Source of the DNA: Phallusia mammillata
Lineage: Eukaryota
Reading direction: 5' to 3'
Assembly: GCA_965637545.1 (NCBI GenBank)
Contig: OZ281496.1
Span: forward strand, 27,590,001-27,654,000
Length of the DNA stretch: 64,000 nucleotides
Each line of letters begins with the position of its first letter. Positions within the stretch are counted from its first letter, which is position 1. This document shows, piece by piece, positions 29,417-47,100 of this stretch. A program made the translations under genes and the position numbers. The notes below the pieces were generated by a model. The model was not told the origin of the DNA, made no database searches, and worked only from the letters and a program-made list of their open reading frames with translations.

Positions 29417-32400
29417 ATGAGTTGTTTGACACTCCGTGCTAGTAATCAAACAGTCGACAGGGGTATATTTCTTGTTGTTATATTTCTTTGTGTGGTATCG
29501 CTGAACCTGGCTAGCGCAAGCAAGTTGTTGTTGGTCATTTTTGACGGAACTGGGTAAGTTTTACTTGTGATACTTCGCTCTTGTTTTATCGGGAATGATA
29601 GAAAATGTTTATAACTTAAAGACATCTTGAACTAAGTGGTGAAAAACACTAAACATTTCCTCAAAGATTTGTGTTGTTTTGTAGACATTACTATGCTGGT
29701 CACAAGGACCAGATACCGGCATTTAAACACCTCCAAGATAATGGAGTTTGGGCGAAATATATGAAGCCCCCTTTTCCAACCTATACCAACCCTTGTCATG
29801 AAACATTGGCCACAGGTAAACGCCATATGACTTTAAGCAGTTGGTTCTGTGATACGAAATACAAATTTGCATTTGCCTCTTGAGATTTTAAACTGCACTT
29901 GGGCTTGAAAGTTTTATGCTTGGCGACAATACAAGAGCAATTAAACAAAAAGTAACAAAGTGTATTACAAAAATGTTAACAACAGAAATTTCTTTTGTCT
30001 CAAATCTGTACATGAAGTGCTCGTGAAACATAAAGTAAACATGCTTTAACACGGTACATAAGTGCTGAAAACGCAAAAAAGTACAAAGTTTATTATTAAC
30101 ACAGTCATAGGCGAGTAGGCGGTGTGGCGCTGCCACCTTGGGTTTATACCACTGTATCAGTGGCTTATACAGCACGGTGGCGGCCACCGTGGATATTTTG
30201 GTTGGTTTGTAGCGATTTTGCACGAAACATCGTAAAATCTACAGAAAAACAGAATAGATTTTGCTTTGAAAACAAGCGTGTTGCCAAAAAAGTCACAAAC
30301 GTTCCTTAAAACCACAAAATTGTTTGTACCTTCATTATGACGTCAACTCCCAACTGTTTGCGCACAATGGTAATGTTTTGTAATAATGGTTATTTCGGGT
30401 GATACAAAGCAACAAACACTTGACGCAACATTTTTTGCACGTTGCTGAACCAACGATAAACGTTACAGCAATGTGTTCCAAAATATTTCAAATTTTTCGT
30501 TTCATTTCATTTTAAATAACGTTGCATTCTATTGGAAGTTTGTTGAGATTTAGGTTAAGGATCTCGTGGCTGAACGCATTAGTGACGTCACACTCAATGT
30601 GACGTCATAATTTTCGTTCGCCACATTGTATTTTCGTGAAACTTGGCGCCTATGAACACAGTTATGCGATAGAAAACGGTTAACTGGTGACAGTCAATAG
30701 ACTTTTTGTAACAGAACCGGATAAAAAATATGACTTTCGTGACAGAACCGACTGGCAAAAAAAGTTAATCCCACCACGGACTAAAACATATGTTAGCCTA
30801 TTGGCGGTTGTGATGTATATAGAACTACTTTGCTAGACATTATTTGGCTTTAAAAAGTGATCTGAATAAATTTATGGGTGTAGAATGATATGTTACCATT
30901 TGGCAGGTTTTGTACGTTTATTGTTTGCAAACAAGTGGCCAAAATAAAGTTAGAAACCTTTTGGTGAATGGGACAATATGGGATAAAACCTGTACGTTTA
31001 CATCAGTAATTTACAAAAATCACGACACTTGGCAGCAATAGACGATATCAGGGGCAAGGGCTCAAGTTAACGTGAACAAAATACAATACAATAATGCGGC
31101 CGTCAATAGTAAGGTTGTGGACCCTTGAGCTATAGGCGATAGTGTTTACTTTTGCATTGCAGGAAAGTTATAGTTGCAGCTACTCGAAAATAAGCTACTG
31201 AAACTTCTAAAAATGCTGACGGTTAATTATGGCTATCAGGGTTGGAGTAAAGGATTAGTATTTGCAGTAGAAGTTTAATTCTCTTTGTCAACCCATCCTA
31301 AAAGATAAACTAATGGCCATAACACTGCACTTTTATTGCGACCATTCTCGCACTATTTTCACAGGGCTTTATGTCGAGTCGCACGGCGTGACCACCAACT
31401 GCAAAATGAGTCTGAGTGAGCCACCGCCAGGTTTGAACTATTACCCGACATACTTGGATGATGAATGGTGGGATAAGGGTGGAGAACCGATATGGATAAC
31501 CGCTGTAAAACAGGTATTGGTGTCAGAGTCTAAGGAAAAGCAAAATTGTTCCTTGAAACATAAAAAATAAGCATTAGATAAAATAATTAGGCTACGCCAC
31601 GCCATTAGTGTATATAGTGTTTTCTTTTGGAAATTCCAAAAGTCTCATATTTTGCGAACAATATTTGCGTAACTTTGGGCCCTTTTGACAAATATCATTA
31701 CATTGATTGAAACCAAGATAAGCGGCATGAAAAAAAGATGATTTATTTTAATTTGCTTTCTAAATGTGGTGTTTAGAGACGTTTAGAAATGCTTTGTGTG
31801 TAACTTTTCCCTGTCCCAAAACCAAATTTCACGAGAAATTAGCAGTAGCTTATATCAGCCTGTGTTCAGATTAAAAAATGGTAAGCCTGTACATTTATTT
31901 AATTCCGTAAAGGGTTTGAAAAGCGGAGGTCACCATTATCCTGGGAGTTATGCAAAGATAGGGGGCCGAACAGCTACATTGCGTGTCCCGTTGATCCCTG
32001 AAACAGCGACAACTGAAGTAGGCTGGAGGAGTCACGTGGACAGCTTTATGTCATGGTTTACTGAACAGGGCTTGGACTTTATAGCAGCTTACTTTCCCCA
32101 CGTAAGTTATGTAGTAGCCTACATTTATTAACTTTGTGCAATTTAGTGGGCTATTATCACAGATTCGCCGGAATCAATCATGCGGTGGGATTCGAATCCA
32201 CTAAGTGCAGCATTTTCCTCATACACTCGACTATTTATTTTCAGCCAAAACAGTTTCAACGTAATTTAACCCAGTCACGAAATTAACCAGGTGTAAAATC
32301 TCGACTTTTGAATGAATAATAAAAAACGTAATAGGTTACCGATTAACTAATCACGAGAGGATAGCTAAAGCTCAACATTTTATATTTTTAAGCCAGACGA

Positions 32401-35400
32401 TCTCAGCCACATATATGGGCCCTGGTCCGAGATTGTCGCAAATGAAACAATGTCAAAAGTGAACAGGACAATTTTCTATCTGTTGGAGAAAGTGAAACAG
32501 TCTGGACTTCAGGATCAACTCGATATAATCATCACAAGGTTAATGTTGTTCAGTAAAAAAGCATAAGCCTACATAAAAACCAATAACAAAGTGTGATAGA
32601 TTTAAGTCCATACAAGCTATATACTCCACGATAAAAAGTTTTGGTAAGATTAACTTAGTTATGATTATCAATCCAAGTTAAATTTTGTTCGACAAACAAT
32701 GTTTCTGAAGTAAACATCCTGTCAAGCCGGAGCCATTGAAGACGCCATACCGAATCAAATCAGTCTCGCAAGCATTTCCACGGGGCAAGGCGTAGGCATA
32801 GCAAAATCTAGCCTCCACCAGGCCTGGCGAACTATAATTTATAGACGGGGTTGCCATCGACTTGAAACCAAAAATAAGGACAATCGAAAAATGAAATTTT
32901 CACACAAAACAAACGTTTTTGGACAAATCTTTTGCAGTTATACGAGCCATGACATATCATATGCAATATTTTGGCAGAAACAATCTGTTCCAGCCACTTC
33001 TTGTTCGTAGAAAATACTAAGTGCAACTCACAACAGCTCAGGTCTAGGTTTACTTTTACTTGTAGCGGGGATTTGACCAGTAATTGTTGAAAATAAGACA
33101 AAAGAAAGGCTCAAGTCAAAAATAAGGACATTTCTTAGAAATAAGGATAATAAACTTTTCTAAGACATAGCCCTTCAAAGTAAGGACAAATCTTAGAAAT
33201 ATGGACGGTATGGCAACCCTGTTTATAGATGATATCGTGATCGTTGGTCTACATCAGGGGTGGGCAAACTTTTCAGTGCAAGGGCCGCATTCAAAAGTTT
33301 TTAATCTTATCGGGCCGCATGGTATTTCACAAACGGCCGCCAATTGCTTGCTTGTTGTTTTGTTTTAAAACAACTGATGTAAAGGATAAGGTTTGTATCA
33401 TATATATACCATTTAAAGTCGCCTAAGATGCTCTGATTAAAAATCTAACTTGTGCACAAGTTTAACTGAACGGAGCTAACTGTTTATGACGTTATAAACT
33501 GTATTGTGGCGATTGCAGTGCCCGTTTTTTCGCATTGTTTGCACATAATAAGCGGATAAAAAGCCTGGCGCATATGGTTACTAGACTGGTAATGTTTTTT
33601 CCAGTCCCACGAAATCTGTTTTAGCAGTTTGAAAATCAAAATATTTAGCAAAATAGATTGCGGCCGCAGGTTGTGCACCCCTGCGCAAAATTATTACATA
33701 GTATATTTTCAGCTTTATGCAAATACGTTTGTTCATGATTGTACAAACAGTGGTTGAAACGCTACAATTGTAATTGTTTCAAAAAAACAAGCGTTTGTTG
33801 CAACAACGGCTGAACCACGTTTTTTGTTAATGAAGTCCTTGTGTCAAAGTTTGGGCGTCAACAGTGCAAAGTGGGCTGTATTTGAAAACGTGAATCGCTT
33901 TTACTTTTATCGAACGAAGAAATTGTGTCAAGTGACGATTTGCATAATAACGTGGCAGGCTAAAGCACGTGAAAAGTATCTGTGTTTAGTTCCAAAGTAT
34001 CGTACGGGTACAGATACTGCACATGGTATTGGTATCGGCAAGTCGCACCCCCGGTATTTTTAAAACTCTGCGCCTGTGCTCATAGTACTATTCAGCGTTA
34101 CTCGGAAACATTTGGCGGGCCGCATGAACTCCTTTGCCGGGCCGCATGCGGCCCGCGGGCCGTAGTTTGCCCACCCCTGGTCTACATGAACGTTTATTAG
34201 CTGTTTTTTAACTATTCACGAAACGCATGCTTCAAAGTTGCAATGTTTGATTTGGCTAAGATTACCATATCTGCAGGAGTAAAATTCCGGACGGTTTTAA
34301 TATCTTAGGCGACAAATACGTAATAAAGCATACTGTTACCAACTTCAACAGTTTAATTTTTGACAAAATAGCATTGCTATTACAGAGATAAGAGCGCAGT
34401 TTTGTTTTTTAATTAGGTTGCAAAACAGATTTATTATAGGATCGGTCCATTTAACAGATTACCATAGGCATATACAACTTTAAAGACGCAAAAATTAAAC
34501 AAATCGCTTTTAAATCATGATGGTAATTTGTTTTGTATGAATGTAGGTAGTTTCATACATTAAAAACAGTTGAACGTAAACTTTTGAGCTCCGCGGAAAT
34601 AGAATAGGAAAAACTGCTGCAGGCTACAAAACGCTAAAATTCCGGTGGTTAAAATCAGAGAGTCGAACCGGTTTATTTCTTTAACCGAACCGCCAATTAC
34701 AATTTTCGTAAAACCATTAAAAATGCAGTCTGTATTATATTTTGTCATTTTTTTCTTCAACTGCAAGATACGCGAGATGACAGCTATTAGGCTATAGGGC
34801 GTATCAAAAAAAAAAAAACAGTGCACGTTTAAAATTCTTTTGGAGTTTCCATGTAGATGATGGGTTGAATTCAAATTAAACGAAAGGGGTTTAGCCTAAT
34901 TTGCCCGAACCGGAACAAAACCTCAACCCGCAAACGTTTAAATGCTGGTGATATTTATAGGCTACATTAAAAATTAGCACATTCCCAATGATATCGTCTT
35001 TGCAGCGACCATGGGTTGGCAGAGGTGGACACAAGCATTACCGAAGATGAAGCTATTTCTGTGTTGAAACACGTCGACGCCAGCCAGCTCGACTATCTAT
35101 ACGTCATGGGAACAAACGCTTTTATCGAACCTAAACCAGGGCAACTGATGGAAGTGTACAGAAAACTGAAAGGTCGGTAGACTGGGCTTCGTCAAATGAT
35201 ACCTTTGCCGTTCATTGGATATTCCTAAGAGTTTCTTTAGAAGTCATACAATGCTGCGGAACAAAGTTTTTTTTAGTGCCATGGAGTCCTTTCAACTAGC
35301 GAATAAATTCAACTTAACTACATGTAAAGTTTTTGTGCAATATTTCAGTTCCAAACAGTCTTTTTTGCCGATTTTGATAAACCATTAATGTTGGCAAGTT

Positions 35401-36835
35401 GCAAGGCAACTATTGAGAAACACAACAGTGAGCCAGATTTATTTTGTTTTGCAGCGGCCAACTTAAAAATGGACGTTTACCTGAAAGACGAACTACCTGA
35501 GCGCTGGCATTTCAAACACGAGAGAGTCACATCGATTTTTCTAGTTGCACACAAAGGCTATAAAATATATGAGGTACAAATGCTCATGGATTGTTTTCGG
35601 GAGCTTTTTTTCAACCGAAACAAACCTCGTTTTAACACAGTATCACCTACAATAGTTTATATTTTTTGTGAAGCATGGCCATAGGATTGAAAAGTCATAA
35701 CCATTTTAGTTTGTCGGGCTGTAGTTAAATTATTATGTGTTGTGTTACCGTGAAGTGAGGATTAGTTTTGTTAACTTGATAAGTTTGATACTGAAACTAA
35801 GTTAACCAAGAATGTGGAGATGGTGTTTAGGATCTAGAAAAGAAAGTTGTTTTTAAAGATAAATTACTGGAAGATCATTATTTGTCATAACGAAAGTCCA
35901 TTTTTTCTCATAAACTGTAACAGGGTCAAATCAAGTAGTAAGTGCATTTCAAAAAATAAAATCGAAGACATGTAGGTCGCATTTAGTTGGTCGGCCGCTT
36001 TTTGTTTGTACAACCGACAACAAGCATCATTTTTTTTCAATTCTGAACTAAAAGGAAGTTGATTGAGACACCACGAGTATTTTAATGGTGTCGGAGCCAT
36101 GCGATTTTGTCTATTCCAGTAAGAAAAACTTGTCACAAGCAACAGTCACTATTTCTACAGATGTTTCCTGGTTATCACGATGAAAAGGGTCAACATGGAT
36201 ACGACAATAATATCAGCGACATGTGGGCAATCTTTTTCGCCTTAGGACCTTCGTTCAAGGTACAACAATACATTAACAGGATTTTTAAGCAAAATACTTA
36301 CACCAAATTTGCCAAGCATGTGCGAACTGGGACTCATAAATAAATTTGGTATTCAATCACAGAATCGCGTTTTTGCCTAACGTCGTCTATGCAACTCCAC
36401 TACTCTCTCGATTAGGCTACATCAGACAATATCTGCTTAAATACAAAAGAATTAACAGGCAAATCACAGAACCTATTTTGACTCAAGCTAACAATTGCTT
36501 CATATTACAATAACCGCCTTTATAGTTAGTTTGTAGACAAACTTTTCAAACAAAGGAATACAACTATTTATGTCATTACAACACAGGAAAACAATTTAGT
36601 TGTGAACAATAATAAAAGTCATAAGTGTCGGAAAGTCAAATGCTACAAAACACATTCTGTTTTAGAAAAACCTTATAATCGAAGGATTCGACTCGATTCA
36701 CGTCTACCCCTTAATGGCGCACTTGCTTGGATTAAATCCTGCTCCGAATAACGGGTCATTGCAAGTTCTTTCTCCAATTCTTGTAGAAGGACGACAACCA
36801 ATTTCCACAACCTGGTACATTTCATCAACAGTTCT

Positions 36836-36838
<3 letters not shown>
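29417..36838 (+). CDS. ENPP7-like ectonucleotide pyrophosphatase/phosphodiesterase (alkaline phosphatase superfamily), interrupted in its last exon by a LINE
   Basis: Phase-consistent exons: 29417-29553, 29685-29815, 31365-31513, 31913-32101, 32393-32538, 35006-35172, 35455-35573, 36161-36259, and 36666 onward. Signal peptide, then LLLVIFDG, FPTYTNPCH (catalytic Thr; PCH as in ENPP7), GLYVESHG, WW..GEPIWIT, PDDLSH, SDHG, GQHGYDN and VYPLMAHLLGLNPAPNNGSL. All canonical metal ligands are present; about 472 aa before the insertion. Confidence 0.92.
32846..33221. mobile_element. hAT-like MITE in ENPP intron 5
   Basis: Termini CGGGGTTGCCAT and ATGGCAACCCTG; perfect 8-bp TSD tttataga (32838-32845 and 33222-33229); subterminal aataaggac repeats. 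Confidence 0.85.
33255..34179. mobile_element. Non-autonomous hAT/Charlie-like element (925 bp) in ENPP intron 5
   Basis: Perfect 16-bp TIRs CAGGGGTGGGCAAACT and AGTTTGCCCACCCCTG; perfect 8-bp TSD gtctacat (33247-33254 and 34180-34187). An extra internal end-like motif (ggttgtgcacccctg, ~33670-33684) suggests a composite element. Confidence 0.9.
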
Positions 36839-36892
<54 letters not shown>

Positions 36893-36934
36893 TGATAAAT
36901 AATAAAATAGAGCGAAAAACGGTAACAAATTACA

Positions 36935-39900
36935 TCACACTTCAGTACATAACAGGCGACACCACTTTTTGCGGTAAGCAAGAAAGTTTCCACGTTTTTT
37001 TGATACATGACATTCTGATACACGTACTGAGTTAAGGAAGCGTACAAATCTAGATACCGTCGGTTTATTTTCACTGTATTTGCATTGGTAAATGACATAT
37101 CTGGCACATAACAACATACAGTTCACCAATTTATCGCCGGATCCACCATTGTGGACACCAAAAAGTAAGTTCACGGGAGGTAACGTCAGTGGGACTCGGG
37201 TTCTAGCACTAATCCATGCACAGACGTTTTCCCAATACAGTCTAGTTACATGACAAGAATAAAAAACATGGTAAACATTTTCTGTAGCATTTTTACAGAA
37301 TGTGCACAAGTCGGAGTCAATTTTCCCAAAGGAGTGCAATATTTGGTTGCACACGATGGCATTCAGATTTAATTTAATTTGAAAACTTCTCAACCTATTT
37401 TCAATAGTGGAATTAAAGTTGTTAATATATACTTCTCGCCACGGCATCTCAAAATTTATGAAAAGCTTGTTTTTCCAAAATTCTTGGGACTTAACTGGCA
37501 CGCGAGCCACGCTGTCTTGTAGCTTTGTGTAAATTGTTTTGACGCTGTTTGTGTCTTTAATAAAATTCAATAAATGTTCTGACTGAGTTGTTTGTGGGTC
37601 GATATAGTTTTCTGAGTCCCATTGCTCAGGCAGACTTGAAACAAGTTTTATAAATTGAATGAACTCTGCGTTATTAGCCTGAAAATTAAATTTTAACGCC
37701 AAGTTGTCGTAAGTTTCATACTCTCCTTCCTTAGTCAATAGGTGTTTATGTAACATTACGCCAGAGTCGATCAGGGGTTTCATACAGAAAGTTTTAGATT
37801 GGTACTTAATTTTTTTGTTTAGCCAAAGTGTCCTTTCTGTCGATTTTGTTTTTAGCAGATTTAAAGTGTGTATGCAACTGACAAGGGTGTGGCGCAGGGT
37901 TCTCAAGGGTAAAACACGTTTAACCTCGGCTCGATTGAGCGATATAGTTGCATTTAGAAAAGCGTTAACTCTTTGTCCCCTTAAGTATGGTGCCTCGATT
38001 TGCTTCCAATCAGCAACTACGCTTTCATCAAGAAGTTTTTGAAACCATTTAAGGTTTAGTGCCAGAATATAATTTTCTACATTAATCATTCCCGCCCCTC
38101 CCTCTTCGATACTTGCGCACAGTGTTGTTCGTTTGACCCTTTCCCATTTTGATCCCCATAAAAAACGGAACAGTATACGGATTAGTTGTTTCAAATATTT
38201 TGCTGACACTGTTACGGGCACAACGCAAAGTTTGAAAGTCAACATTGGCACCAGTAGGCTTTTAATTATTGTTACTTTCCCCAATAAGGAAAGACCCCTT
38301 GTCGACCACAGGTTTGCAATAACTTTGATCTTTTGCAGTATAGGTAAAAAATTGTATTCTAGCAATTTTTCATCGCTGCACGTCGTGGTTGGAATTACAA
38401 CCCCCAAATACCTAGTTTTTTCAGAAGGCCACAAGAGCCCGGATTGTTGCATCGGTTTGTGGCAACAAGATCGTTTGGAACCAACAAAAAATGCGTTTGA
38501 TTTGTTCATATTTATTTTGCATCCCGACATATCGCCAAACTCTGTGATTATACTTAATGCTTCGCGAAAATCATTATCGCTGCCGGAGAGAAACAAAACG
38601 GTGTCATCCGCAAACATGGAAACTTTAAATTCTTTGTCATGTACTTTTATACCTAAAAAGTTCCCCTGTCTTAACATTATTCCAAGGCATTCAATACTTA
38701 GAACAAAAAGCGTGGGAGACAGAGGATCACCTTGCCTCACTCCTCTTTCGACTTTAAATGGCGCAGATACAAAACTGTTATTAATTATTGCCGATGTCGG
38801 GTTTTGGTAAAAACATTTAACATATCTAATAATTGTTGGGCCAAAACCAAAAGCTTCTAATGCAGAAAACATAAAATCCCAACTTAACGTATCAAAAGCT
38901 TTGAATATGTCCAATGACAAAATTGCCCCTGGAATGTTTTGGTGGTCGGCACTGTCTATAATATCAAATAGAAGTCGAATGTTAGTACCAATATATCTAT
39001 TTGGTATGAAACCATTTTGGTCAGAAGAGATTACATGGTTCAAAACCGACCGTAATCTGTTGTTAACTGCTTTAGAAGCAATTTTATAATCAGCATTTAG
39101 TAGCGTAATTGCCCTATAACTACCTGGGTGAAGCGGGTCCTTATCCTTTTTGGGAAGAAGAGTTATAACAGCTCTGGACTGCGAAGGAGTCAAATTTCCA
39201 ATTTTTATCGAATAACTCCACGCCGCCGTAAAAAGACCTTTTAGGTTTTCCCAAAATGTTAGGTAGAACTCGGCGGGGAAGCCATCGAGTCCCGGTGACT
39301 TATTTTTGCCCATGTCTTTTAGTGCGTTTAAAAACTCGGTCTCCAGAATTTCAGTTTCTATTTTTTCCATGGCTTCTAGCGGAATTTGGGGAAGTCCCAA
39401 CGATGCTAGTTTAGACGCATTGATGTTTTTATGTTGGACTTTATCATCCCTTCTATACAGTTGTTCATAAAATTTCGCTAAGCTTTTCAGAATTTTTTCT
39501 TGATCTGTGAGGATTTCCGATCCAGAAATTAGGCGATTTATACTTTTCTTTTCACCCTGTCGTTTTTCCAGGTTTAAAAAGTATTTCGTATTTTTTTCTC
39601 CGTCTTCAGCCCAGCGAGTCCGACTACGGGTAATGGCGCTGATTGTTTGGCGCTTTAGAAGTTTATCTAGTTCGTTTTGAAGGGCAGATAAATTGTCGTG
39701 TAGTTGGTCACGTTCCGTACCCGTCGTGTTACAAACAGCATTTTGAATTGTGACGATATCCTTTTCTATTTTCGTTAGTTTGGCGCTGTTATTCCGTTTT
39801 TTTTCGGATGCATACCGGATTGTTTCCCCTCGGATCACAGCTTTTAAAGCGTCCCACATAACATGCGGATTGATAGCGGAATCTTGATTATCCGTTTTAT

Positions 39901-40738
39901 ACATGTCAATGAGGGATTTAATCTTTTCTATATAATTCAAATCGGTTAGGAAACTCGCGTTTAATTTCCAGTAACCCTTTCCACGTGGTAAGGGATTAAC
40001 GGCGACCTCTAGGGCGAGCATATAGTGGTCGGACATGGTCCCAGGAACAATGTCGACCTGTTTTACATTTTGTATTAGATCATTACCAAGTAAATAAAAA
40101 TCGATTCGAGATGCCACTGGGGGATTTTTCTGAACCCTTGAGAACTTTTTCAGCATTGGGTTTTTGTGGCGGAAGATATCTGTGAGGTTGAAATGATTAA
40201 TGTAACGTTGTAAGGTAGCTTTTGCTTTTTGGTTACTGTGGATTGATTTTCCGGTTTTATCTAGGTCTGTATTAATTACAAGATTAAAGTCTCCTCCCAT
40301 TATAATTGACGCGGTTGAAAATCCGTTAAGCGTGGCAAATAATTTTTCAAAAAAGTCTGGATCATCTTTGTTTGGTGCATAAACGTTTACCAACAATAGT
40401 GGCTGCGAATTGATGGTCGCTTCTATCATTATAAATCTACCGTCTACGTCTCGGTATATATTCGTTAAAGAGTAGGAAAGATGTTTGGCAAAGAGAATTG
40501 CGACCCCTCGACTATTGGTGCTTCCGTGTGCCCAAAACGCTTCACCGCCCCACTCCATTCCCCACAATTTTTCATTCTTCTCACAGCCATGTGTTTCTTG
40601 TAAAAATGCTACATGACATTTTTTACGGTGCAAATATTTAAATATAGTTTTCCTTTTTAGAGCTAGGTTTAAACCTCGAACATTGAGAGAATTAATTTTA
40701 AGAGCCATAAAATCTAAAGAGAGAGAGTGATATTTCAT
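36935..40738 (-). CDS. LINE ORF2: APE endonuclease, reverse transcriptase and C-terminal CCHC finger (1267 aa)
   Basis: Endonuclease motifs NVRGLN, FLQETH, NVYAPN, GGDFN, SRIDF and SDH. RT motifs KSPGLDG, YRAITLLNADYKI, LDIFKAFD, GVRQGDPLSP, FADD and YLG. C-terminal CTFC..ENVYHVFYSC. Confidence 0.97.
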   Translation of the reverse strand: MKYHSLSLDFMALKINSLNVRGLNLALKRKTIFKYLHRKKCHVAFLQETHGCEKNEKLWGMEWGGEAFWAHGSTNSRGVAILFAKHLSYSLTNIYRDVDGRFIMIEATINSQPLLLVNVYAPNKDDPDFFEKLFATLNGFSTASIIMGGDFNLVINTDLDKTGKSIHSNQKAKATLQRYINHFNLTDIFRHKNPMLKKFSRVQKNPPVASRIDFYLLGNDLIQNVKQVDIVPGTMSDHYMLALEVAVNPLPRGKGYWKLNASFLTDLNYIEKIKSLIDMYKTDNQDSAINPHVMWDALKAVIRGETIRYASEKKRNNSAKLTKIEKDIVTIQNAVCNTTGTERDQLHDNLSALQNELDKLLKRQTISAITRSRTRWAEDGEKNTKYFLNLEKRQGEKKSINRLISGSEILTDQEKILKSLAKFYEQLYRRDDKVQHKNINASKLASLGLPQIPLEAMEKIETEILETEFLNALKDMGKNKSPGLDGFPAEFYLTFWENLKGLFTAAWSYSIKIGNLTPSQSRAVITLLPKKDKDPLHPGSYRAITLLNADYKIASKAVNNRLRSVLNHVISSDQNGFIPNRYIGTNIRLLFDIIDSADHQNIPGAILSLDIFKAFDTLSWDFMFSALEAFGFGPTIIRYVKCFYQNPTSAIINNSFVSAPFKVERGVRQGDPLSPTLFVLSIECLGIMLRQGNFLGIKVHDKEFKVSMFADDTVLFLSGSDNDFREALSIITEFGDMSGCKINMNKSNAFFVGSKRSCCHKPMQQSGLLWPSEKTRYLGVVIPTTTCSDEKLLEYNFLPILQKIKVIANLWSTRGLSLLGKVTIIKSLLVPMLTFKLCVVPVTVSAKYLKQLIRILFRFLWGSKWERVKRTTLCASIEEGGAGMINVENYILALNLKWFQKLLDESVVADWKQIEAPYLRGQRVNAFLNATISLNRAEVKRVLPLRTLRHTLVSCIHTLNLLKTKSTERTLWLNKKIKYQSKTFCMKPLIDSGVMLHKHLLTKEGEYETYDNLALKFNFQANNAEFIQFIKLVSSLPEQWDSENYIDPQTTQSEHLLNFIKDTNSVKTIYTKLQDSVARVPVKSQEFWKNKLFINFEMPWREVYINNFNSTIENRLRSFQIKLNLNAIVCNQILHSFGKIDSDLCTFCKNATENVYHVFYSCHVTRLYWENVCAWISARTRVPLTLPPVNLLFGVHNGGSGDKLVNCMLLCARYVIYQCKYSENKPTVSRFVRFLNSVRVSECHVSKKRGNFLAYRKKWCRLLCTEV

Positions 40739-42096
40739 TTTTGCACTTGTACTCCAATATTAATGTCCCATTCATATTCTATGCCACATTCGCACAAAAA
40801 CGGTTGGCTGGGACTGATAAGACGAGACAATTTCTTACCACACTTACAATTAATAATTTTGCATCTACATTCTATGTTAGAACATTCTTGGCTCGTTGTC
40901 ACGTTCGGCAATAAATTAACGGTTTTACATAAACAAGTTAATGAAAACTTTTGGCACACAACACATTCAAATAAATTACCTTCCACTTGGAATTCCGGTT
41001 GGAAGTCTCTGCAACACGGCATCCATCTCATTCGATTGTTGCAGCCCGGGCACTGACACGTTTTCGTGTTTTCCTGGACCAGGAAGAGCTCTTCAATGCA
41101 GCATTTAATTGCTACCAAAAACTTTTTTGAGCAGCTCCAACATATAAACGTCTTTGATTCTTCAGTTAGATGCGCTTCTGCTTGGCACCCTGGACAGATT
41201 AGTGAAATAGTTTTCTCACAAAAGCTTTTGCTTTGTGGAAACTCCTCAGGGCTTCGTTCCAGTCTTTTCCTGCTGGCTGTTTTTAAAGGTGCCTTCTTGT
41301 CTTGTGGGGTGCTTGTCATCCCGCTTTCTGTTACAGGTAGGTTGCCCGAATCCTCGCGATTTTCCTGCTGGTCACCAACAATTAGGTCAGGCGCATTTGT
41401 TGTGATTTTTTGATTGCATTCGGCCACCTCAGGGCGAGTCGGGGAAGTGTTATCAGCGTTTGTACGCTGTCCAGTTTCCAACTGTTTTCCTTCTACAGTT
41501 CCAGTTAACACAGGAAAATCGCTTTTTCTTTGTGAACATTCAGCTTGTTTGTGACCTTCCTTACCACAGTATTTACAAGTGAAAACTTGACCGTTGTAGG
41601 TAACATAAAATTCGCAGTTTCCAATCCTTATATAGCTTGGGATAGGTTTTTTCTCCACATCTTCAGCATTCATAGTTGCGATGCGCATTCCAGATAGCAG
41701 CCCTTCTTTACCTTTTCTGTGTATTATTTTTAACACTTTGCCGTATCTATCAGAAAGTGCTTCAGCTAAAATTTCATTTGGAAACGGCACCGGCACCCAT
41801 CCAATCGCAACATTAATCCTGTCGCTTTCGTAAAGTTTAAGTTGTTTAACTTTACCTGACAACTTTGCATAAAGTTCAAGAATATTTTGTCGGCTTGTGC
41901 AAGTAACATCTATGCTGTTCCCTCGCATTTCAGCTATTCCAATGACTTTTTTTATTGAGAAATCCAAATTTTTCAAAATCTCGATTGCATCATGACGCTT
42001 GCATACATTTCCAGTTTTGAAGTTAAGACAATTCGGTCTTCTTAATCCTACCGCTGTTTTATTTACCGCCTGTGCGTAACTTGGTTTGTCCGCCAT
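40735..42096 (-). CDS. LINE ORF1: gag-like RNA-binding region, CCHC zinc knuckle, disordered linker and Cys-rich C-terminal array (453 aa)
   Basis: Knuckle CKYCGKEGHKQAEC (C-x2-C-x4-H-x4-C); position directly upstream of ORF2; the C-terminal ~150 aa carry repeated Cys pairs. Confidence 0.92.
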   Translation of the reverse strand: MADKPSYAQAVNKTAVGLRRPNCLNFKTGNVCKRHDAIEILKNLDFSIKKVIGIAEMRGNSIDVTCTSRQNILELYAKLSGKVKQLKLYESDRINVAIGWVPVPFPNEILAEALSDRYGKVLKIIHRKGKEGLLSGMRIATMNAEDVEKKPIPSYIRIGNCEFYVTYNGQVFTCKYCGKEGHKQAECSQRKSDFPVLTGTVEGKQLETGQRTNADNTSPTRPEVAECNQKITTNAPDLIVGDQQENREDSGNLPVTESGMTSTPQDKKAPLKTASRKRLERSPEEFPQSKSFCEKTISLICPGCQAEAHLTEESKTFICWSCSKKFLVAIKCCIEELFLVQENTKTCQCPGCNNRMRWMPCCRDFQPEFQVEGNLFECVVCQKFSLTCLCKTVNLLPNVTTSQECSNIECRCKIINCKCGKKLSRLISPSQPFLCECGIEYEWDINIGVQVQK

Positions 42097-42135
42097 TTTT
42101 TAGCTCCGCACTCCACGAGCGCAACACGTGAATCC

Positions 42136-42258
42136 TCAACAGTTCTGTTGGTCGCTTTTGTGTGTCTTGTTTTATTGAGCGCCCTCTGCCGGAGACAAAC
42201 AATGTCTAGAATCTATTCTCGACCAACGAAGAATGGAGGAACTAAAAAAGACGTTTAG
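42136..42258 (+). pseudogene. Displaced 3' remainder of the ENPP last exon (rest of the TM helix and the cytoplasmic tail)
   Basis: Removing the LINE and one TSD copy restores the frame ...TWYISSTVLLVAFVCLVLLSALCRRQTMSRIYSRPTKNGGTKKDV*, a hydrophobic helix followed by basic residues. Confidence 0.9.
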
Positions 42259-44166
42259 GATAACTAATTACTACTACACATCACACAAGACAAGTGGCTT
42301 TTTTAATTTTTTGGGTGTGTGTAACATTATCACTTTAAAAGTTCATTTTTTACTTGGGTTGAGAAACAAGAACCACGATCGTTTTTTGTCTTTAAATTCT
42401 TGACTTCAGACGCGGATTTTGTAGCGTTTAAAGGTAAATTGCAAAAATTCGTGCAAAGCAGGAGATGCTCTTTTGTAACATCACGTATAAACACTTTATG
42501 CACTTGTAACGTACAAATCATTTATAATGTAAATATGAACTTGACGTATGAAAAATAGATAACAAAACTAATTATGCTGCTTTTGTGGTCGTTAAAGAAC
42601 CAACCGAGCGCTATGTCTAACTAAACACTGCAACGTTTAGTGCCATAATTTTCGATCAGAACCTTTCTTCAAAAGTTTTCAATTTCTTTTTTCAGAACGT
42701 TTATTTGAAGGTTTCTAATTGCTTTAAGATTTCATGGCGACAGTTTCTTTTATTAAACTGGGCAATAACGTTTCCGTTTCCGTTCATGTTTACAGGCAGA
42801 ATGAATATACCATCAGCTAGCAAAATACACAGCCACCCAACAGGTCTGCATGAAGCTAGTAAAACCTTAACGACAAACTTTATGTACAATATTTCGCTTT
42901 TACGATCATTATAAAACATGAAAGGGTTTAGTCAAAGCTCACAAGAGGTTACACACCGCGCAACAGCTTATGCGAGCAAACGTCACTCCGTCAGAATGCT
43001 AAGTACGTGCAATCAGCTGTTTTCCGGAAAGTTTACGATAGACCGTCACGTGGTACGCTGCAGAACTGGGTATTTCCCAATTTCGTTAACCACGCGTGGT
43101 TCCAGTAAAAGCGGTTTATTATCGAACGTTGATTAAGCACAGCCCGCAAACATAAAGAAGATCTAAGTTTTAATCCTACGATGAAATAATTATTTAGGTT
43201 TTGCTTGAATCAATCTTATAAAATGGAATGTATAAAAAGCAAGTTATATTAACGCGGTAATATTTGATATTACTACCGTGGGTAGGCTGCAGGCAACACA
43301 ATGTTCAAAAGCTTTTCAGAGCTTAACGCTAATCTTTTAGAGGTAATACTTATTTGTTCATGACATTTACGATACAAAATATATAACACTAAAGTACATT
43401 TTTCGTAATCTTGGGGACTATTGACATAGGATACGACGTAATTCAGTATTTTAGTTAAAAAAGGTCCTTGGGAATTTTGTTGGAAAACAAAGATCAATTG
43501 ATGGCGCTGCATATTTATACTTATCATAGATGTAGCCCCTCTAACACGTTTATACGAAATAATCATATTTTAATTTGAGGTAAAATATCGAAGTGTTTGT
43601 ACCATTTTTGTGCATGCGAGTATTTTTTTAGGTAAAACTGTCAAATTATAAAGTCATAAATTGTTCATGCTTATGGTGCTGTGAACAGCTTTCTAACGAA
43701 TGTAATAGAAATTAACTGTATTAAAAAAACTTGAGCTTTTTTGGTATTTTACTTCACAAAATTAATAGTAGTTTCTTTTAAAATTTTATCCTTCCCTAAG
43801 TTTTAATGCTGAAGTACTTGCTTTCAAGGAAACATTGTTTTACCAACGTTTTTTTGAGTCAGTTAATACAAATTTGTTTGCGATATGTTCGTAAACCATA
43901 AACAAATGTTAACATGATCACGTGAGTTCAAAGGTCGTGTAACGCGCCAATCAACAAAAACATGCGCGAAATGTATTTTTGAGGGAAATCCTAAATATAT
44001 TTTCGGCATTGTTTTCCTAATCAAGTTTATCACAGGAATCCTGCTGCGTTTTATAGTTTTTTTAGCGTCATTAAACTGTAATCGTTTATGTCGTTTTCAC
44101 AAACCGGATTTGATCTTCAGGGAAAACAAAGATTTTGACTGGAAATAACTTACCCCTTCGTGAGTG

Positions 44167-47100
44167 ATGGACAACGGTAAGCATGTCAAATTAGATAGAA
44201 AACGATTCAAACAAACCAAAGGGGTTTAGACAGAAGCTAATAATATAACACATTTGCAGATCAGAAAACTTTTAAGGCGGAAAATGGGGTAAGTACAGGT
44301 TTTTTTGTGGCATTTTTTATGCAACAAGAGATACATCAGTGTTTAAATTGATTTCCAAGCTTTTTATATGGATCATTTATCCAAACGTTCACATTTACAG
44401 TGGTGATTCAAAACATGAAAATGTTGTCAAAACATATTTTTTATTTTAACAATTATTTGAAGTCAGTTGGGTCATCATGTCAACTATACAATGATTTGCT
44501 TTTTATAGGAAGATAGCACTACTTGTGATCATAAAAAGAGGTTTGTATAAGTCTAACTTTCAATACCTATGTATCACTGTTGAAATGAGAACTAATGCTA
44601 TGCAACAAAAAAAATTTTTTATAGGACAAGTAAGGAAAAGATGGATTGTACAGACAGCGGTATACCTGACATGACATCACAGGTAAAATAAAATAATTGT
44701 GCTGGTTAATAATAAATTTTCTTGATGTAAATTGACTGTACCTGTAATGATCTTTCTTTTGTTGTCACAGTCATCTGTTGACGGGAAGGTATCTGAAACT
44801 AGGACTCCAACAAGTTTGAGGTAATTAAAATATATAGTTTTGGAATCTTTCTTGTGTTTCGCTGCAATTAAATGGATGTTTGTAAGAATCTGATAAATTT
44901 ATTATACCAAAAAAATTTCACAGTACAAAACACTAAACCAGTTGCTGTATTTTATTATTTTACAAGACATATGTATTTCGCTTTCATAAGATTAGTCAGT
45001 GTGTGAAAAACACCACAAGTAGTAGCGAAATATGTTTGATTTAGTGTTTTTCACTTAGAACAGTGGTTCTTAACCGGTGCGAAATTTCTCACCAGTGGGA
45101 AATTCAGCGTATTCAGTGGGAAATTATGTAAGTCAGGAGTAACCAAACTCGGTCCAGTGGGTCGAATCCGGCTTCGAATTGACCGTTGAATGTTAATTTA
45201 CTGCATTTTTAGCAACAACATTAGATAAATTTCACCTGTTTTGACAAGACACATAAAAAATCAAATTAAAAAATCAAAAAAAAACGTTTGTTACATCACA
45301 GACATGTCTGAAAGCATTAATGCCTTAGTTATTGTGCGCGAATAAATGTCTTTCTATGTTGATTGTGATGCAATAATTGAGTTTTGCAAGCAGAAAAGAT
45401 TCAACATTCCACATATTTTTACTCTTTCACTGAAGCACTATTCAAACTAAATAGGATTGCAGCAAGCTTTTAAGATCCCAACCAAATCGCTTTACAAAAT
45501 TATTTCAATCAAAGTTAATGTAGAACACAAAACTCATCATAAAAATAACAGAGTGGGAAATTCGAACTTGGTGATCGACTTTAGTGGGAAACGATCCCAA
45601 AAAGGTTAAGAACTACTGACTTAGAAGTTTCTTGCAGTCGATGAATTAATGACATTGAATCACCACATTTCTCTGCTTTACTTAAAAGGAGGTTTCAAAA
45701 ATGAGTGCTTATACATGTAAGTTCGTTTTTTTAAAAGTTATCAGAAAGATTTAATCCATATATTAAAATGTAATTGTGATAAATTGTGTGGTATAAAGTA
45801 CAAACTACTGCAAAGTTATGTTGTTGCAGGTTTTCAGACACTATGCATGTTGTTACATTTTTTTGGCCAGAAGGCATGGTTTGGACAGGTATCTTGATTT
45901 TTTGCATATTTAGGTGCGCAAATATAAACCATACAAGCTAATCTTGACAGACCTACCAGAAATATTTACATGCAGGGTTCCCGCGCAATTTTCGTGTATA
46001 AATTCCATGACTTTTCCAAAACTTTTCAAGGAAAAAAATCAAATTTCCGTAACCTTATTCGAACAAAATCGAGCAATTCCCATTACAAAACTAGTAAAGA
46101 GGCTTTGGTAGATGCAGCCAATTTACCTCACTTGCAAGGAATATACATACGTTACGTAATTTAATATTCCCAACTCTATCTGGCATTTTCAGGGTAAAAC
46201 AGGTGTCAAATTCCATACTTTTTCAAGGACTTTTGCGAAAGTTGGCTTTTTTCAAAACTTTTCCAGGCCTTAAAAATACAAATTTAAATTCCATAACTTT
46301 TCCAGGTTTTCCATGACCGCGGGAACCCTGTACATGATTTGATGGTACAACAGTTTATAGGTTGTGTTTTAACACATTTAGTTTCTACTGAAAATATACT
46401 TTTTGCTTGGTAACAACCATTCTTATTTTTAGTCACCCTGTGGAGACCACCGACTTAATCGCACACAACACAATGGGGTAAATATCATAAAAAGATAATT
46501 AGGCAATTTTACAATTATTAACAAATCACAATAGTAGCTAACCTGTTTGACGACATGCGTTTAGTTTCCAACTATCATTCATTTCTTTAAAAGGTGAATG
46601 CACTTTTTTTCTCTGTTCCTAGGTCAAAATCAATTGCCATCAACACATCAAGTGGTTCTTCTGTAAATTTAGGCACTTTTACAAGCCATGGTCTAAATCA
46701 AACAAACAGTAACATCAAAAACCCACATTATACTGAAGGTAAACAAGACTAAACTATTGACTATTGACAGTAGGTTTAACCCTTGGTTTTAAAGAATTAG
46801 TATTGTTAAAATTTTGATTTTAATCACTGGATAATCACATTATGGTTATGGTATATAACACATGCTGGTTGGCTTTAGAGTTAAATGTACCTTAGAATTA
46901 ATGAAAGACAAAAAAGATGAAATTCTTGTTTTTACAGGCAATATTTCCACTGTAGTGCCTGAAACTCCAAGCACAAAAACATTCCAACCACAGGGGACTG
47001 TTCAAGAGATAGGTTAGTTTAACTTATTTTGTAAAGCTTGTTATTGCAATGGCTGCAAATATCATTTCCAATGGACCAAAGTCTGAGCTGTTAAATATAG

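What the first reader, a model, noticed from the sequence alone, without database searches (positions are those of the whole stretch)
36666..42258. A LINE cuts an ENPP7-like enzyme's transmembrane exon, and its antisense poly(A) supplies a poly-Phe replacement anchor, a stop and a poly(A) signal
Seen: the TSD tcaacagttctgtt sits inside the TM codons (...WYISSTVL|LVAFVCLVLLSALCRRQ...). On the inserted allele the ENPP frame reads into the 54-T run and gives ...WYISSTVL-F18-IDK*. The stop (36900-36902) overlaps an AATAAA (36901-36906) on the ENPP strand. All eight upstream exons and the catalytic residues are intact. Poly-Phe arises in any frame, so an error in homopolymer length changes only the residues after it. 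Known: ENPP4-7-type enzymes are held by a C-terminal hydrophobic anchor or GPI signal, and a stop in the last exon normally escapes NMD. Inference: instead of a knockout, this may be a ready-made retrotransposon-derived membrane anchor that deletes the cytoplasmic tail or converts it to a GPI-like signal.
Basis: partly seen in the sequence, partly recalled or inferred. Interest (0 to 1): 0.85.

Follow-up and report, generated by a model that had tools for sequence, protein, structure and literature searches.

The report
Young LINE insertion truncating an ENPP7-like gene
A recently jumped, still variable LINE sits in the last coding exon of a sea-squirt ENPP7-like enzyme gene and would swap its membrane anchor and tail for 18 phenylalanines; nothing shows that this protein is made or useful, so it reads as an ordinary insertion allele.

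Summary
A full-length L1-clade LINE (36839-42135, minus strand) has both ORFs intact and a 54-nt poly(A). It is flanked by a perfect 14-bp target-site duplication (36825-36838 and 42136-42149). It splits the transmembrane codons of exon 9 of an otherwise intact nine-exon ENPP7-like gene. On this allele the frame reads ...STVL-F18-IDK, then a stop at 36900-36902 that overlaps AATAAA at 36901-36906.

- The copy differs by 0-1 mismatch plus one gap from two other copies in the genome, so it is very young.
- Public contigs indicate a polymorphism. One DNA run breaks at both junctions, which fits the filled site. Two RNA-type runs each have one contig on both flanks, which fits the empty site.
- No ENPP transcript from the filled allele was seen. 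The RNA seen over the exon's right-hand part is an antisense spliced transcript.
- The lost tail ends in KKDV, a dilysine motif shared by the three other tail-bearing tunicate relatives, so losing it is probably not neutral.
- The gene has at least five paralogues, two of them with tail-less hydrophobic C-termini.

Most likely this is a segregating insertion allele that truncates or alters the protein, not an adopted anchor. This scan's earlier notes hold nothing similar on other DNA.

The parts
29417..36838 (+). ENPP7-like gene, exons 1-8 and the left part of exon 9. Exons: 29417-29553, 29685-29815, 31365-31513, 31913-32101, 32393-32538, 35006-35172, 35455-35573, 36161-36259, 36666-36838.
   Evidence: All borders are GT-AG and the frame is open. 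Three exons have ENPP7 (5TCD) as best PDB match. PF01663 hit over cut-off on exon 2. Catalytic positions are kept.
36825..36838 (.). Left copy of the 14-bp target-site duplication, inside the TM codons (S-T-V-L).
   Evidence: Identical to 42136-42149.
36837..36890 (+). 54-T run. It is the LINE poly(A) read on the ENPP strand and gives 18 Phe codons in the ENPP frame.
36900..36906 (+). Stop codon TAA (36900-36902) overlapping AATAAA (36901-36906) on the ENPP strand. Both come from the reverse complement of the LINE 3' UTR.
   Evidence: Other copies of the family show the same 3' end sequence.
36839..42135 (-). Full-length L1-clade LINE, 5297 nt including the poly(A). The last two 5' letters (42134-42135) are not shared with other copies.
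36935..40738 (-). LINE ORF2, 1267 aa, open. It has endonuclease, reverse transcriptase and a C-terminal zinc domain.
   Evidence: Pfam RVT_1, Exo_endo_phos and zf-RVT. It aligns end to end with human LINE-1 ORF2p, E 9e-108.
40735..42096 (-). LINE ORF1, 453 aa, open, no Pfam match.
42136..42149 (.). Right copy of the target-site duplication.
42150..42258 (+). Severed end of ENPP exon 9: the rest of the TM helix, a basic cytoplasmic tail ending in KKDV, and the native stop.
42242..44741 (-). Intron of an antisense (minus-strand) spliced transcript. It reads CT..AC on the plus strand. Its acceptor lies inside the last ENPP codons, and the exon runs leftwards over the insertion site.
   Evidence: Loose ends at 42243 in runs X4 and X9 match 44744 onwards. 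Dinucleotides checked.

Best explanation
This is a very recent, still polymorphic retrotransposition of an active L1-clade LINE into the last coding exon of one ENPP7-like paralogue of an ascidian.

Shown:
- The element entered by target-primed reverse transcription. It has a 14-bp TSD, a 54-nt poly(A) and a full-length 5' end with two extra letters.
- It lies antisense to the gene and cuts the C-terminal TM helix after ...STVL (residue 436).
- Read from the DNA, the filled allele encodes a 457-aa protein. Its last 36 residues (most of the TM helix plus a tail ending in KKDV) are replaced by F18-IDK.

Inferred: the allele is a change- or loss-of-function variant that is tolerated because it is new and because the family has several other members. 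It is not an evolved or adopted anchor. If the mRNA is made and ends at the AATAAA or at one of nine further hexamers inside the antisense LINE, the product would have a tail-less hydrophobic C-terminus. In the secretory pathway such an end is either processed as a GPI signal or sent to degradation. Either way the dilysine ER-retrieval-type motif is lost.
For: Structure.

Youth:
- 99.92% identity (1 mismatch, 1 gap in 5298) to a copy on another chromosome.
- 0 mismatches over 4234 nt to a 5'-truncated copy.
- 99.3-99.5% to four more copies.
- Each distinct insertion has its own 11-15-bp TSD and poly(A); two of the six copies share one TSD through a duplication.

Polymorphism:
- DNA run X3 has one contig ending 36 letters past 36825 and another starting 7 letters inside the LINE 5' end. 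That fits the filled site.
- In X4 a contig of depth 16.5 accounts exactly for the bins on both flanks (2.06+37.13=39.19, and 16.5x44/191=3.80).
- In X8 both flanks give the same depth (9.04 and 9.03). One contig on both sides fits the empty site.
- No placement of the 5311-nt skip has splice dinucleotides on either strand, so such a bridge is not splicing.

Redundancy: PF01663 exon hits cluster at several further places on three chromosomes, which I read as about six more genes. Two tandem paralogues on the same chromosome are about 38-78% identical exon by exon.

Tail function: KKDV in the window protein, and KHKGV, KPKLL and KFKGV in the three other tail-bearing tunicate relatives.
Against: - The empty allele is inferred from depth arithmetic, not read directly. 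The tool masked 36826-36906 and dropped one joint and three loose ends there.
- The samples are coded, so X3 may be related to the reference animal.
- All runs were contigs, which cannot show transcript ends or strand, so the lack of an ENPP transcript from the filled allele is not evidence of absence.
- The length of a 54-nt homopolymer in an assembly is uncertain, so the exit frame after the Phe run is uncertain.
Confidence: 0.8

Rival explanations
1. The filled allele is expressed, is polyadenylated at 36901-36906 and escapes NMD. It yields an active ENPP7-like enzyme held in the membrane by the poly-Phe stretch or by a GPI anchor added at a nearby small residue.
For: - F18 is far more hydrophobic than the native helix. 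Mean Kyte-Doolittle is 2.93 against 2.63, and the octanol-scale sum is -30.8 against -9.6 kcal/mol over 19 residues.
- The stop and AATAAA follow directly, in the last exon.
- The catalytic domain is intact.
- Two paralogues and most tunicate relatives end in tail-less hydrophobic C-termini. One paralogue shows an N-S-A, spacer, 17-residue hydrophobic pattern.
Against: - No transcript evidence was obtained.
- The insertion is too young and too variable to have been selected.
- The sequence after the hexamer is not GU- or U-rich, so the poly(A) site context is weak.
- From general knowledge: a 54-U tract can pair with the poly(A) tail, promotes slippage, and poly-Phe tends to aggregate.
- The conserved dilysine tail is lost.
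Confidence: 0.13
2. The allele is effectively null. Transcription through the antisense LINE is silenced, ends heterogeneously, or gives an unstable mRNA or protein. The gene is on its way to becoming a pseudogene, on a lineage that was already evolving fast.
For: - The window protein sits on a long branch, 1.32 against a median of 0.35.
- It differs at several positions invariant in nine relatives, for example Cys to Ala in the LMCHLLG motif and FDGF-W to FDGTGH.
- The ENPP strand has seven AATAAA and three ATTAAA inside the antisense LINE.
- In three RNA-type runs, coverage right of the site stops at the antisense acceptor 42243, so the native ENPP 3' end was not seen either.
Against: - All nine exons, the splice sites and the catalytic residues are intact, so the gene was functional until the insertion.
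- Nothing here measures the stability of the mRNA or the protein.
Confidence: 0.4
3. The junction is an assembly artefact: a LINE copy wrongly placed in the exon.
For: The family has near-identical copies that could confuse an assembler.
Against: - A perfect 14-bp TSD exactly at the two ends of a complete element with a poly(A) is the mark of real retrotransposition.
- In a run filed under another sample and study (X3), contigs end at both junctions. The right one carries LINE-side letters next to the TSD.
Confidence: 0.02

Closest known systems
Polymorphic or de novo L1 insertions into coding exons, as catalogued for human disease and mouse germ-line mutations (reviews PMC4859970 and PMC6466679; titles and abstracts seen only)
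   Same: Full-length L1-type element, TSD, poly(A), insertion in an exon, a gene product truncated or altered, and an allele still segregating.
   Different: The host is an ascidian and the target is an ENPP7-like paralogue. The element lies antisense in the last exon, so the host frame reads the poly(T) as Phe18 and meets a stop and an AATAAA at once. No phenotype or transcript is known.
Vertebrate ENPP7 (alkaline sphingomyelinase), PDB 5TCD
   Same: Best PDB match for three exons. It is a single PDE domain with the T-x-P-C-H nucleophile motif. It has an N-terminal signal and a C-terminal hydrophobic anchor, and ENPP4, 5 and 7 are type I membrane proteins (PMC8808174).
   Different: Identity is only about 37-42%. 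Tunicate ENPP7-like proteins form their own expanded clade. The window protein has a basic tail ending in KKDV, which the rat and Latimeria proteins lack. Substrate is untested.
GPI-attachment signals, as in ENPP6 (PMC8808174)
   Same: The filled allele would end in a long hydrophobic stretch with almost no cytoplasmic residues, preceded by small residues (S, T, G). That is the general layout of a GPI signal. Paralogues show the same layout.
   Different: No predictor or experiment was available. A run of 18 Phe is unlike natural signals. The spacer between candidate omega sites and the hydrophobic part is uncertain.
C-terminal dilysine (KKXX / KXKXX) ER-retrieval motifs of type I membrane proteins (own knowledge of COPI sorting)
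   Same: The native tail ends in K-K-D-V. The three other tail-bearing tunicate relatives end in K-x-K-x-x.
   Different: This rests on a motif match in four sequences. Localisation is untested.

Membership tests
ENPP / PF01663 phosphodiesterase, ENPP7-like branch | Match to the Phosphodiest domain over the curated cut-off | tested here: met
   Exon 2 (window 29701-29823) scores 36.4 bits against a cut-off of 23. Full-length relatives carry PF01663.
ENPP / PF01663 phosphodiesterase, ENPP7-like branch | Metal-binding Asp/His residues and the Thr nucleophile are conserved | tested here: met
   The alignment with rat, Xenopus, Latimeria and six tunicate proteins shows FDG, T-N-P-C-H, H-G-x-x-x-N, P-D-x-x-x-H, S-D-H-G and H-G-Y-D-N all present.
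ENPP / PF01663 phosphodiesterase, ENPP7-like branch | Closer to ENPP7 than to ENPP1-6 | tested here: met
   ENPP7 (5TCD) is the top PDB match for three exons and the only ENPP matched by exon 4. The nearest named proteins are all called ENPP7-like.
ENPP / PF01663 phosphodiesterase, ENPP7-like branch | Sphingomyelinase / phospholipase C activity | not testable with these tools
   Needs an enzyme assay.
L1-clade LINE | ORF2 with an APE endonuclease, a reverse transcriptase and a C-terminal zinc domain, collinear with L1 ORF2p | tested here: met
   Pfam hits. End-to-end match to human L1 ORF2p, residues 14-1261 against 9-1249, E 9e-108.
L1-clade LINE | Poly(A) tail and a variable-length TSD from target-primed reverse transcription | tested here: met
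   The window copy has A54 and a 14-bp TSD. The other copies looked at have poly(A) and 11-15-bp TSDs.
L1-clade LINE | Recent activity: several near-identical full-length copies | tested here: met
   Five full-length copies and one 5'-truncated copy at 99.3-99.9% identity. About 46 matches in all.
Exapted (domesticated) TE-derived coding sequence | Fixed in the species or conserved between species | tested here: not met
   Contigs of runs X4 and X8 lie on both flanks as one contig, which fits the empty site, while X3 and the reference are filled.
Exapted (domesticated) TE-derived coding sequence | A chimeric host-TE mRNA is expressed | tested here: inconclusive
   Only contigs were available and 36826-36906 was masked. 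No contig was shown to run from exon 9 into the T-run as RNA.
GPI-anchored protein | N-terminal signal peptide, plus a small omega residue, a spacer and a hydrophobic C-terminal end | tested here: inconclusive
   There is a hydrophobic N-terminal segment and a hydrophobic F18 end. The omega site was judged only by eye, with no predictor.
GPI-anchored protein | Release by PI-PLC | not testable with these tools
   Needs an experiment.

The most novel reading that the evidence does not exclude
The filled allele is expressed and gives an active ENPP7-like enzyme whose LINE-derived Phe18 end works as a membrane or GPI-attachment signal while removing a dilysine ER-retrieval tail. A single segregating retrotransposition would then move the enzyme from the early secretory pathway to the cell surface. 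That would be a natural one-step swap of anchor type, of the kind that separates tail-bearing from tail-less members of this tunicate family.
Probability: 0.1. Interest if true: 0.6.

Novelty: new member of a known kind. Interest (0 to 1): 0.3.

Why it matters
As it stands this is a clean example of an active L1-type element creating a structural variant in a coding exon of an ascidian. It is useful as a marker of ongoing retrotransposition and as a natural allele for studying an ENPP7-like paralogue.

Any antisense poly(A) in a coding exon becomes a hydrophobic poly-Phe stretch in every frame, and this family's 3' end then supplies stops and an AATAAA. That could in principle create tail-less hydrophobic C-termini.

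It would matter only if the isoform is shown to be made and membrane-bound. The conserved dilysine ending of the lost tail gives a concrete localisation test.

Tried and rejected
- Word-index protein search with exon 9: blank. The length filter excludes full-length proteins.
- Profile search with a backbone plus the ten exon peptides: blank. Almost all columns were mostly gaps and could not form a profile. This wasted the last such search, so the species' own annotated or transcript-derived protein was never retrieved.
- Exact-product look-ups for LINE ORF2 and for two small ORFs expected on the X4 contig: nothing on record.
- Scan of metagenome contigs for the empty-site junction: blank.
- Search of the assembly for a second haplotype copy of either flank: only the window itself.
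- Read laying: the junction stretch 36826-36906 was skipped as a repeat, and one joint and three loose ends there were dropped. The empty allele therefore rests on depth arithmetic.
- Search for minus-strand coding exons between 42.2 and 50.5 kb: none obvious, so the antisense transcript is left uncharacterised.
- Precise splicing-out of the LINE: rejected, because no canonical dinucleotides occur at any of the 15 equivalent placements.
- A cryptic donor at 36831 joined to the acceptor at 42142 would shift the frame (worked out by hand; the shifted frame is the one read).
- The LINE 5' end is not the host spliced leader reported for other LINE families in this genome. This was my own comparison from memory of the Ciona leader and was not tested.
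Full report
OBSERVATION

The stretch is as described. The 14-mer tcaacagttctgtt occurs at 36825-36838 and again at 42136-42149. Between the two copies lie 5297 nt. On the plus strand these begin with a run of T; the whole run is 54 T at 36837-36890, the first two shared with the duplication. On the minus strand the insert carries two open reading frames, of 453 aa (40735-42096) and 1267 aa (36935-40738). The long one has endonuclease, reverse-transcriptase and zf-RVT domains. It aligns end to end with human LINE-1 ORF2p at E 9e-108. This is therefore a full-length L1-clade LINE, antisense to the host gene, with poly(A) and a target-site duplication.

THE HOST GENE

I assembled nine exons with GT-AG borders and one open frame (coordinates under parts).
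- Three exons have human ENPP7 (5TCD) as best solved relative, and exon 4 matches no other ENPP.
- The nearest full-length proteins are the ENPP7-like proteins of Styela, Ciona and Clavelina, at 42-50% identity. This fits earlier notes that the genome is a sea squirt.
- The metal-binding and nucleophile positions are all present.
- With the insert and one duplication copy removed, the gene encodes 472 aa. It has an N-terminal hydrophobic signal and a C-terminal helix (ISSTVLLVAFVCLVLLSAL), followed by a basic tail ending in KKDV.
- As assembled, it encodes 457 aa ending STVL-F18-IDK. The stop is at 36900-36902 and AATAAA at 36901-36906.
- The other two exit frames from the T-run give Y-stop or a 48-residue extension.

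AGE OF THE INSERTION

The family is small and very uniform.
- The window copy differs from a copy on another chromosome by one mismatch and one gap in 5298 nt.
- It differs from a 5'-truncated copy by no mismatch in 4234 nt.
- It differs from four further full-length copies by 0.5-0.7%.
- Each distinct insertion has its own 11-15-bp duplication and poly(A); two copies share theirs through a duplication.

The family is, or very recently was, active, and this insertion is among its youngest.

POLYMORPHISM

Only assembled contigs of public runs were available, and the tool skipped 36826-36906 as a repeat.

In the DNA-type run X3 (another sample and study than the possible source of the assembly) the flanks have equal depth, 291 and 271.
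- The left contig stops 36 letters beyond 36825.
- The right contig starts 7 letters inside the LINE 5' end and carries the LINE-side letters aatcc next to the duplication.
- This fits the filled site and speaks against an assembly artefact.

In the RNA-type run X4, a 1370-nt contig of depth 16.5 lies on 36577-36824.
- That single depth explains the bin 36800-36999 exactly (2.06 from this contig plus 37.13 from a LINE contig gives 39.19; observed 39.2).
- It also explains the bin 42200-42390 exactly (16.5 x 44/191 = 3.80; observed 3.8).

In X8 the same arithmetic gives 9.04 on the left and 9.03 on the right.

One contig on both flanks means DNA without the LINE. None of the 15 equivalent placements of the 5311-nt skip has splice dinucleotides on either strand, so this is not splicing. 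The tool also reported that one joint and three loose ends in the masked stretch were dropped. I conclude, by inference rather than direct reading, that the empty allele exists in other samples and that the insertion is polymorphic.

TRANSCRIPTS

The contigs of X4 and X9 leave the reference at 42243 and continue with letters found at 44744. The skipped stretch, 42242-44741, reads CT..AC on the plus strand. It is therefore a canonical intron of a minus-strand RNA.
- Its acceptor sits in the last ENPP codons.
- Its exon runs leftwards across the insertion site and over exon 9.
- I found no coding exons for it. The neighbouring zinc-finger genes lie on the plus strand.
- In X4 and X8 nothing covers 42244-42390, so the native ENPP 3' end was not seen in these samples.
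- No ENPP-sense transcript of the filled allele could be shown or excluded.

PREDICTED CONSEQUENCES

F18 is more hydrophobic than the native helix. The stop lies in the last exon, so escape from exon-junction-dependent NMD is expected from general knowledge.

The AATAAA has a long U-rich stretch upstream but no GU-rich stretch downstream. The antisense LINE offers six more AATAAA and three ATTAAA.

A hydrophobic end with only two or three trailing residues is, from general knowledge of the secretory pathway, either processed as a GPI signal or degraded.

Both kinds of C-terminus occur in the family. The two tandem paralogues 185 kb away, and most tunicate relatives, end in a tail-less hydrophobic stretch. 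One paralogue shows an N-S-A, spacer, 17-residue hydrophobic pattern. Two Ciona intestinalis proteins, one C. savignyi protein and the window protein have a helix plus a basic tail. All four tails end in a dilysine pattern: KHKGV, KPKLL, KFKGV and KKDV. That is the form of the COPI-dependent ER-retrieval signal of type I membrane proteins (own knowledge). The tail is therefore probably functional and its deletion not neutral.

The tree does not resolve whether the tail-bearing proteins form one clade. The window protein sits on a long branch, 1.32 against a median of 0.35. It departs from relatives at several otherwise invariant positions.

MECHANISM AND RIVALS

The best reading is a young, segregating retrotransposition allele that replaces the last 36 residues. 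It was created by target-primed reverse transcription at ...ctgtt/ggtcgc. It is tolerated because it is new and because several further family members exist; I read the PF01663 exon hits as about six more genes.

Whether the allele is null, hypomorphic or mislocalised cannot be decided here. I give about 0.4 to an effectively null allele and about 0.13 to a stable poly-Phe- or GPI-anchored enzyme. Both are sub-cases of the main reading. An assembly artefact is very unlikely.

COMPARISON AND NOVELTY

L1 insertions into exons that truncate proteins are well known in human and mouse (reviews listed; only their titles and abstracts were seen). ENPP4, 5 and 7 are type I membrane proteins and ENPP6 is GPI-anchored (PMC8808174).

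What is particular here is the geometry. The element is antisense in the last exon and inside the TM helix, so the poly(A) complement extends the hydrophobic segment and the LINE 3' UTR complement supplies a stop and a hexamer. That is a neat but unselected accident, so this is a new member of a known kind. This scan's earlier notes hold nothing similar elsewhere in this genome.

LIMITS

- Runs and organism are coded, and all runs were contigs.
- The key junction stretch was masked by the tool.
- The species' own proteins and contigs seem to be withheld from the look-up tools.
- No GPI or TM predictor was available.

Noticed in passing
window 42242-44741 (minus strand), exon from 42241 leftwards: An antisense spliced transcript overlaps the end of the ENPP gene. 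Contigs of runs X4 and X9 join 42243 to 44744 through a canonical minus-strand intron. A minus-strand AATAAA lies at 42176-42181. In the filled allele this RNA would run into the LINE in sense orientation.
   Followed up: partly
window 42244-42255; relatives P0023, P0026, P0030: All four tail-bearing tunicate ENPP7-like proteins end in a dilysine pattern (KKDV, KHKGV, KPKLL, KFKGV). This suggests ER retrieval for this subgroup, while most other family members have tail-less, GPI-like ends.
   Followed up: partly
G000 C6:24596656-24601896 and C6:24705414-24710654 (L031, L032): Two copies of the same LINE 109 kb apart share identical flanks and the same TSD. The LINE was therefore copied there by a segmental duplication, not by two insertions.
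   Followed up: no
window 42097-42135 and copies L030-L034: Four full-length copies start at the same letters (TTCACGTG) and the fifth one letter in; the window copy's ORF1 ATG lies only about 40 nt inside. Each has 2-4 extra letters at the 5' junction. The 5' UTR is unusually short and begins with an E-box-like CACGTG.
   Followed up: no
window 29417-42258, protein alignment: The window ENPP7-like protein differs from nine relatives at otherwise invariant positions (Cys to Ala in LMCHLLG, FDGFRW to FDGTGH, EPD to HPD). It also sits on a long branch, so it may be fast-evolving or under relaxed constraint.
   Followed up: partly
window 41292-41368 and 39872-39938: LINE contigs of run X4 carry a 75-nt skip in ORF1 and small indels in ORF2. 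Variant copies of the family are therefore present or expressed in that sample.
   Followed up: no
window 1917-1988 (+): One tRNA gene, Rfam RF00005 at 67.6 bits.
   Followed up: no
G000 C2:9222914-9224186: A PF01663 match covers positions 1-201 of the model in one open frame, followed by a second match with stops inside (216.8 bits for the first). It may be an intron-poor or retrocopied ENPP-type gene, about 23-36% identical to the window protein.
   Followed up: no
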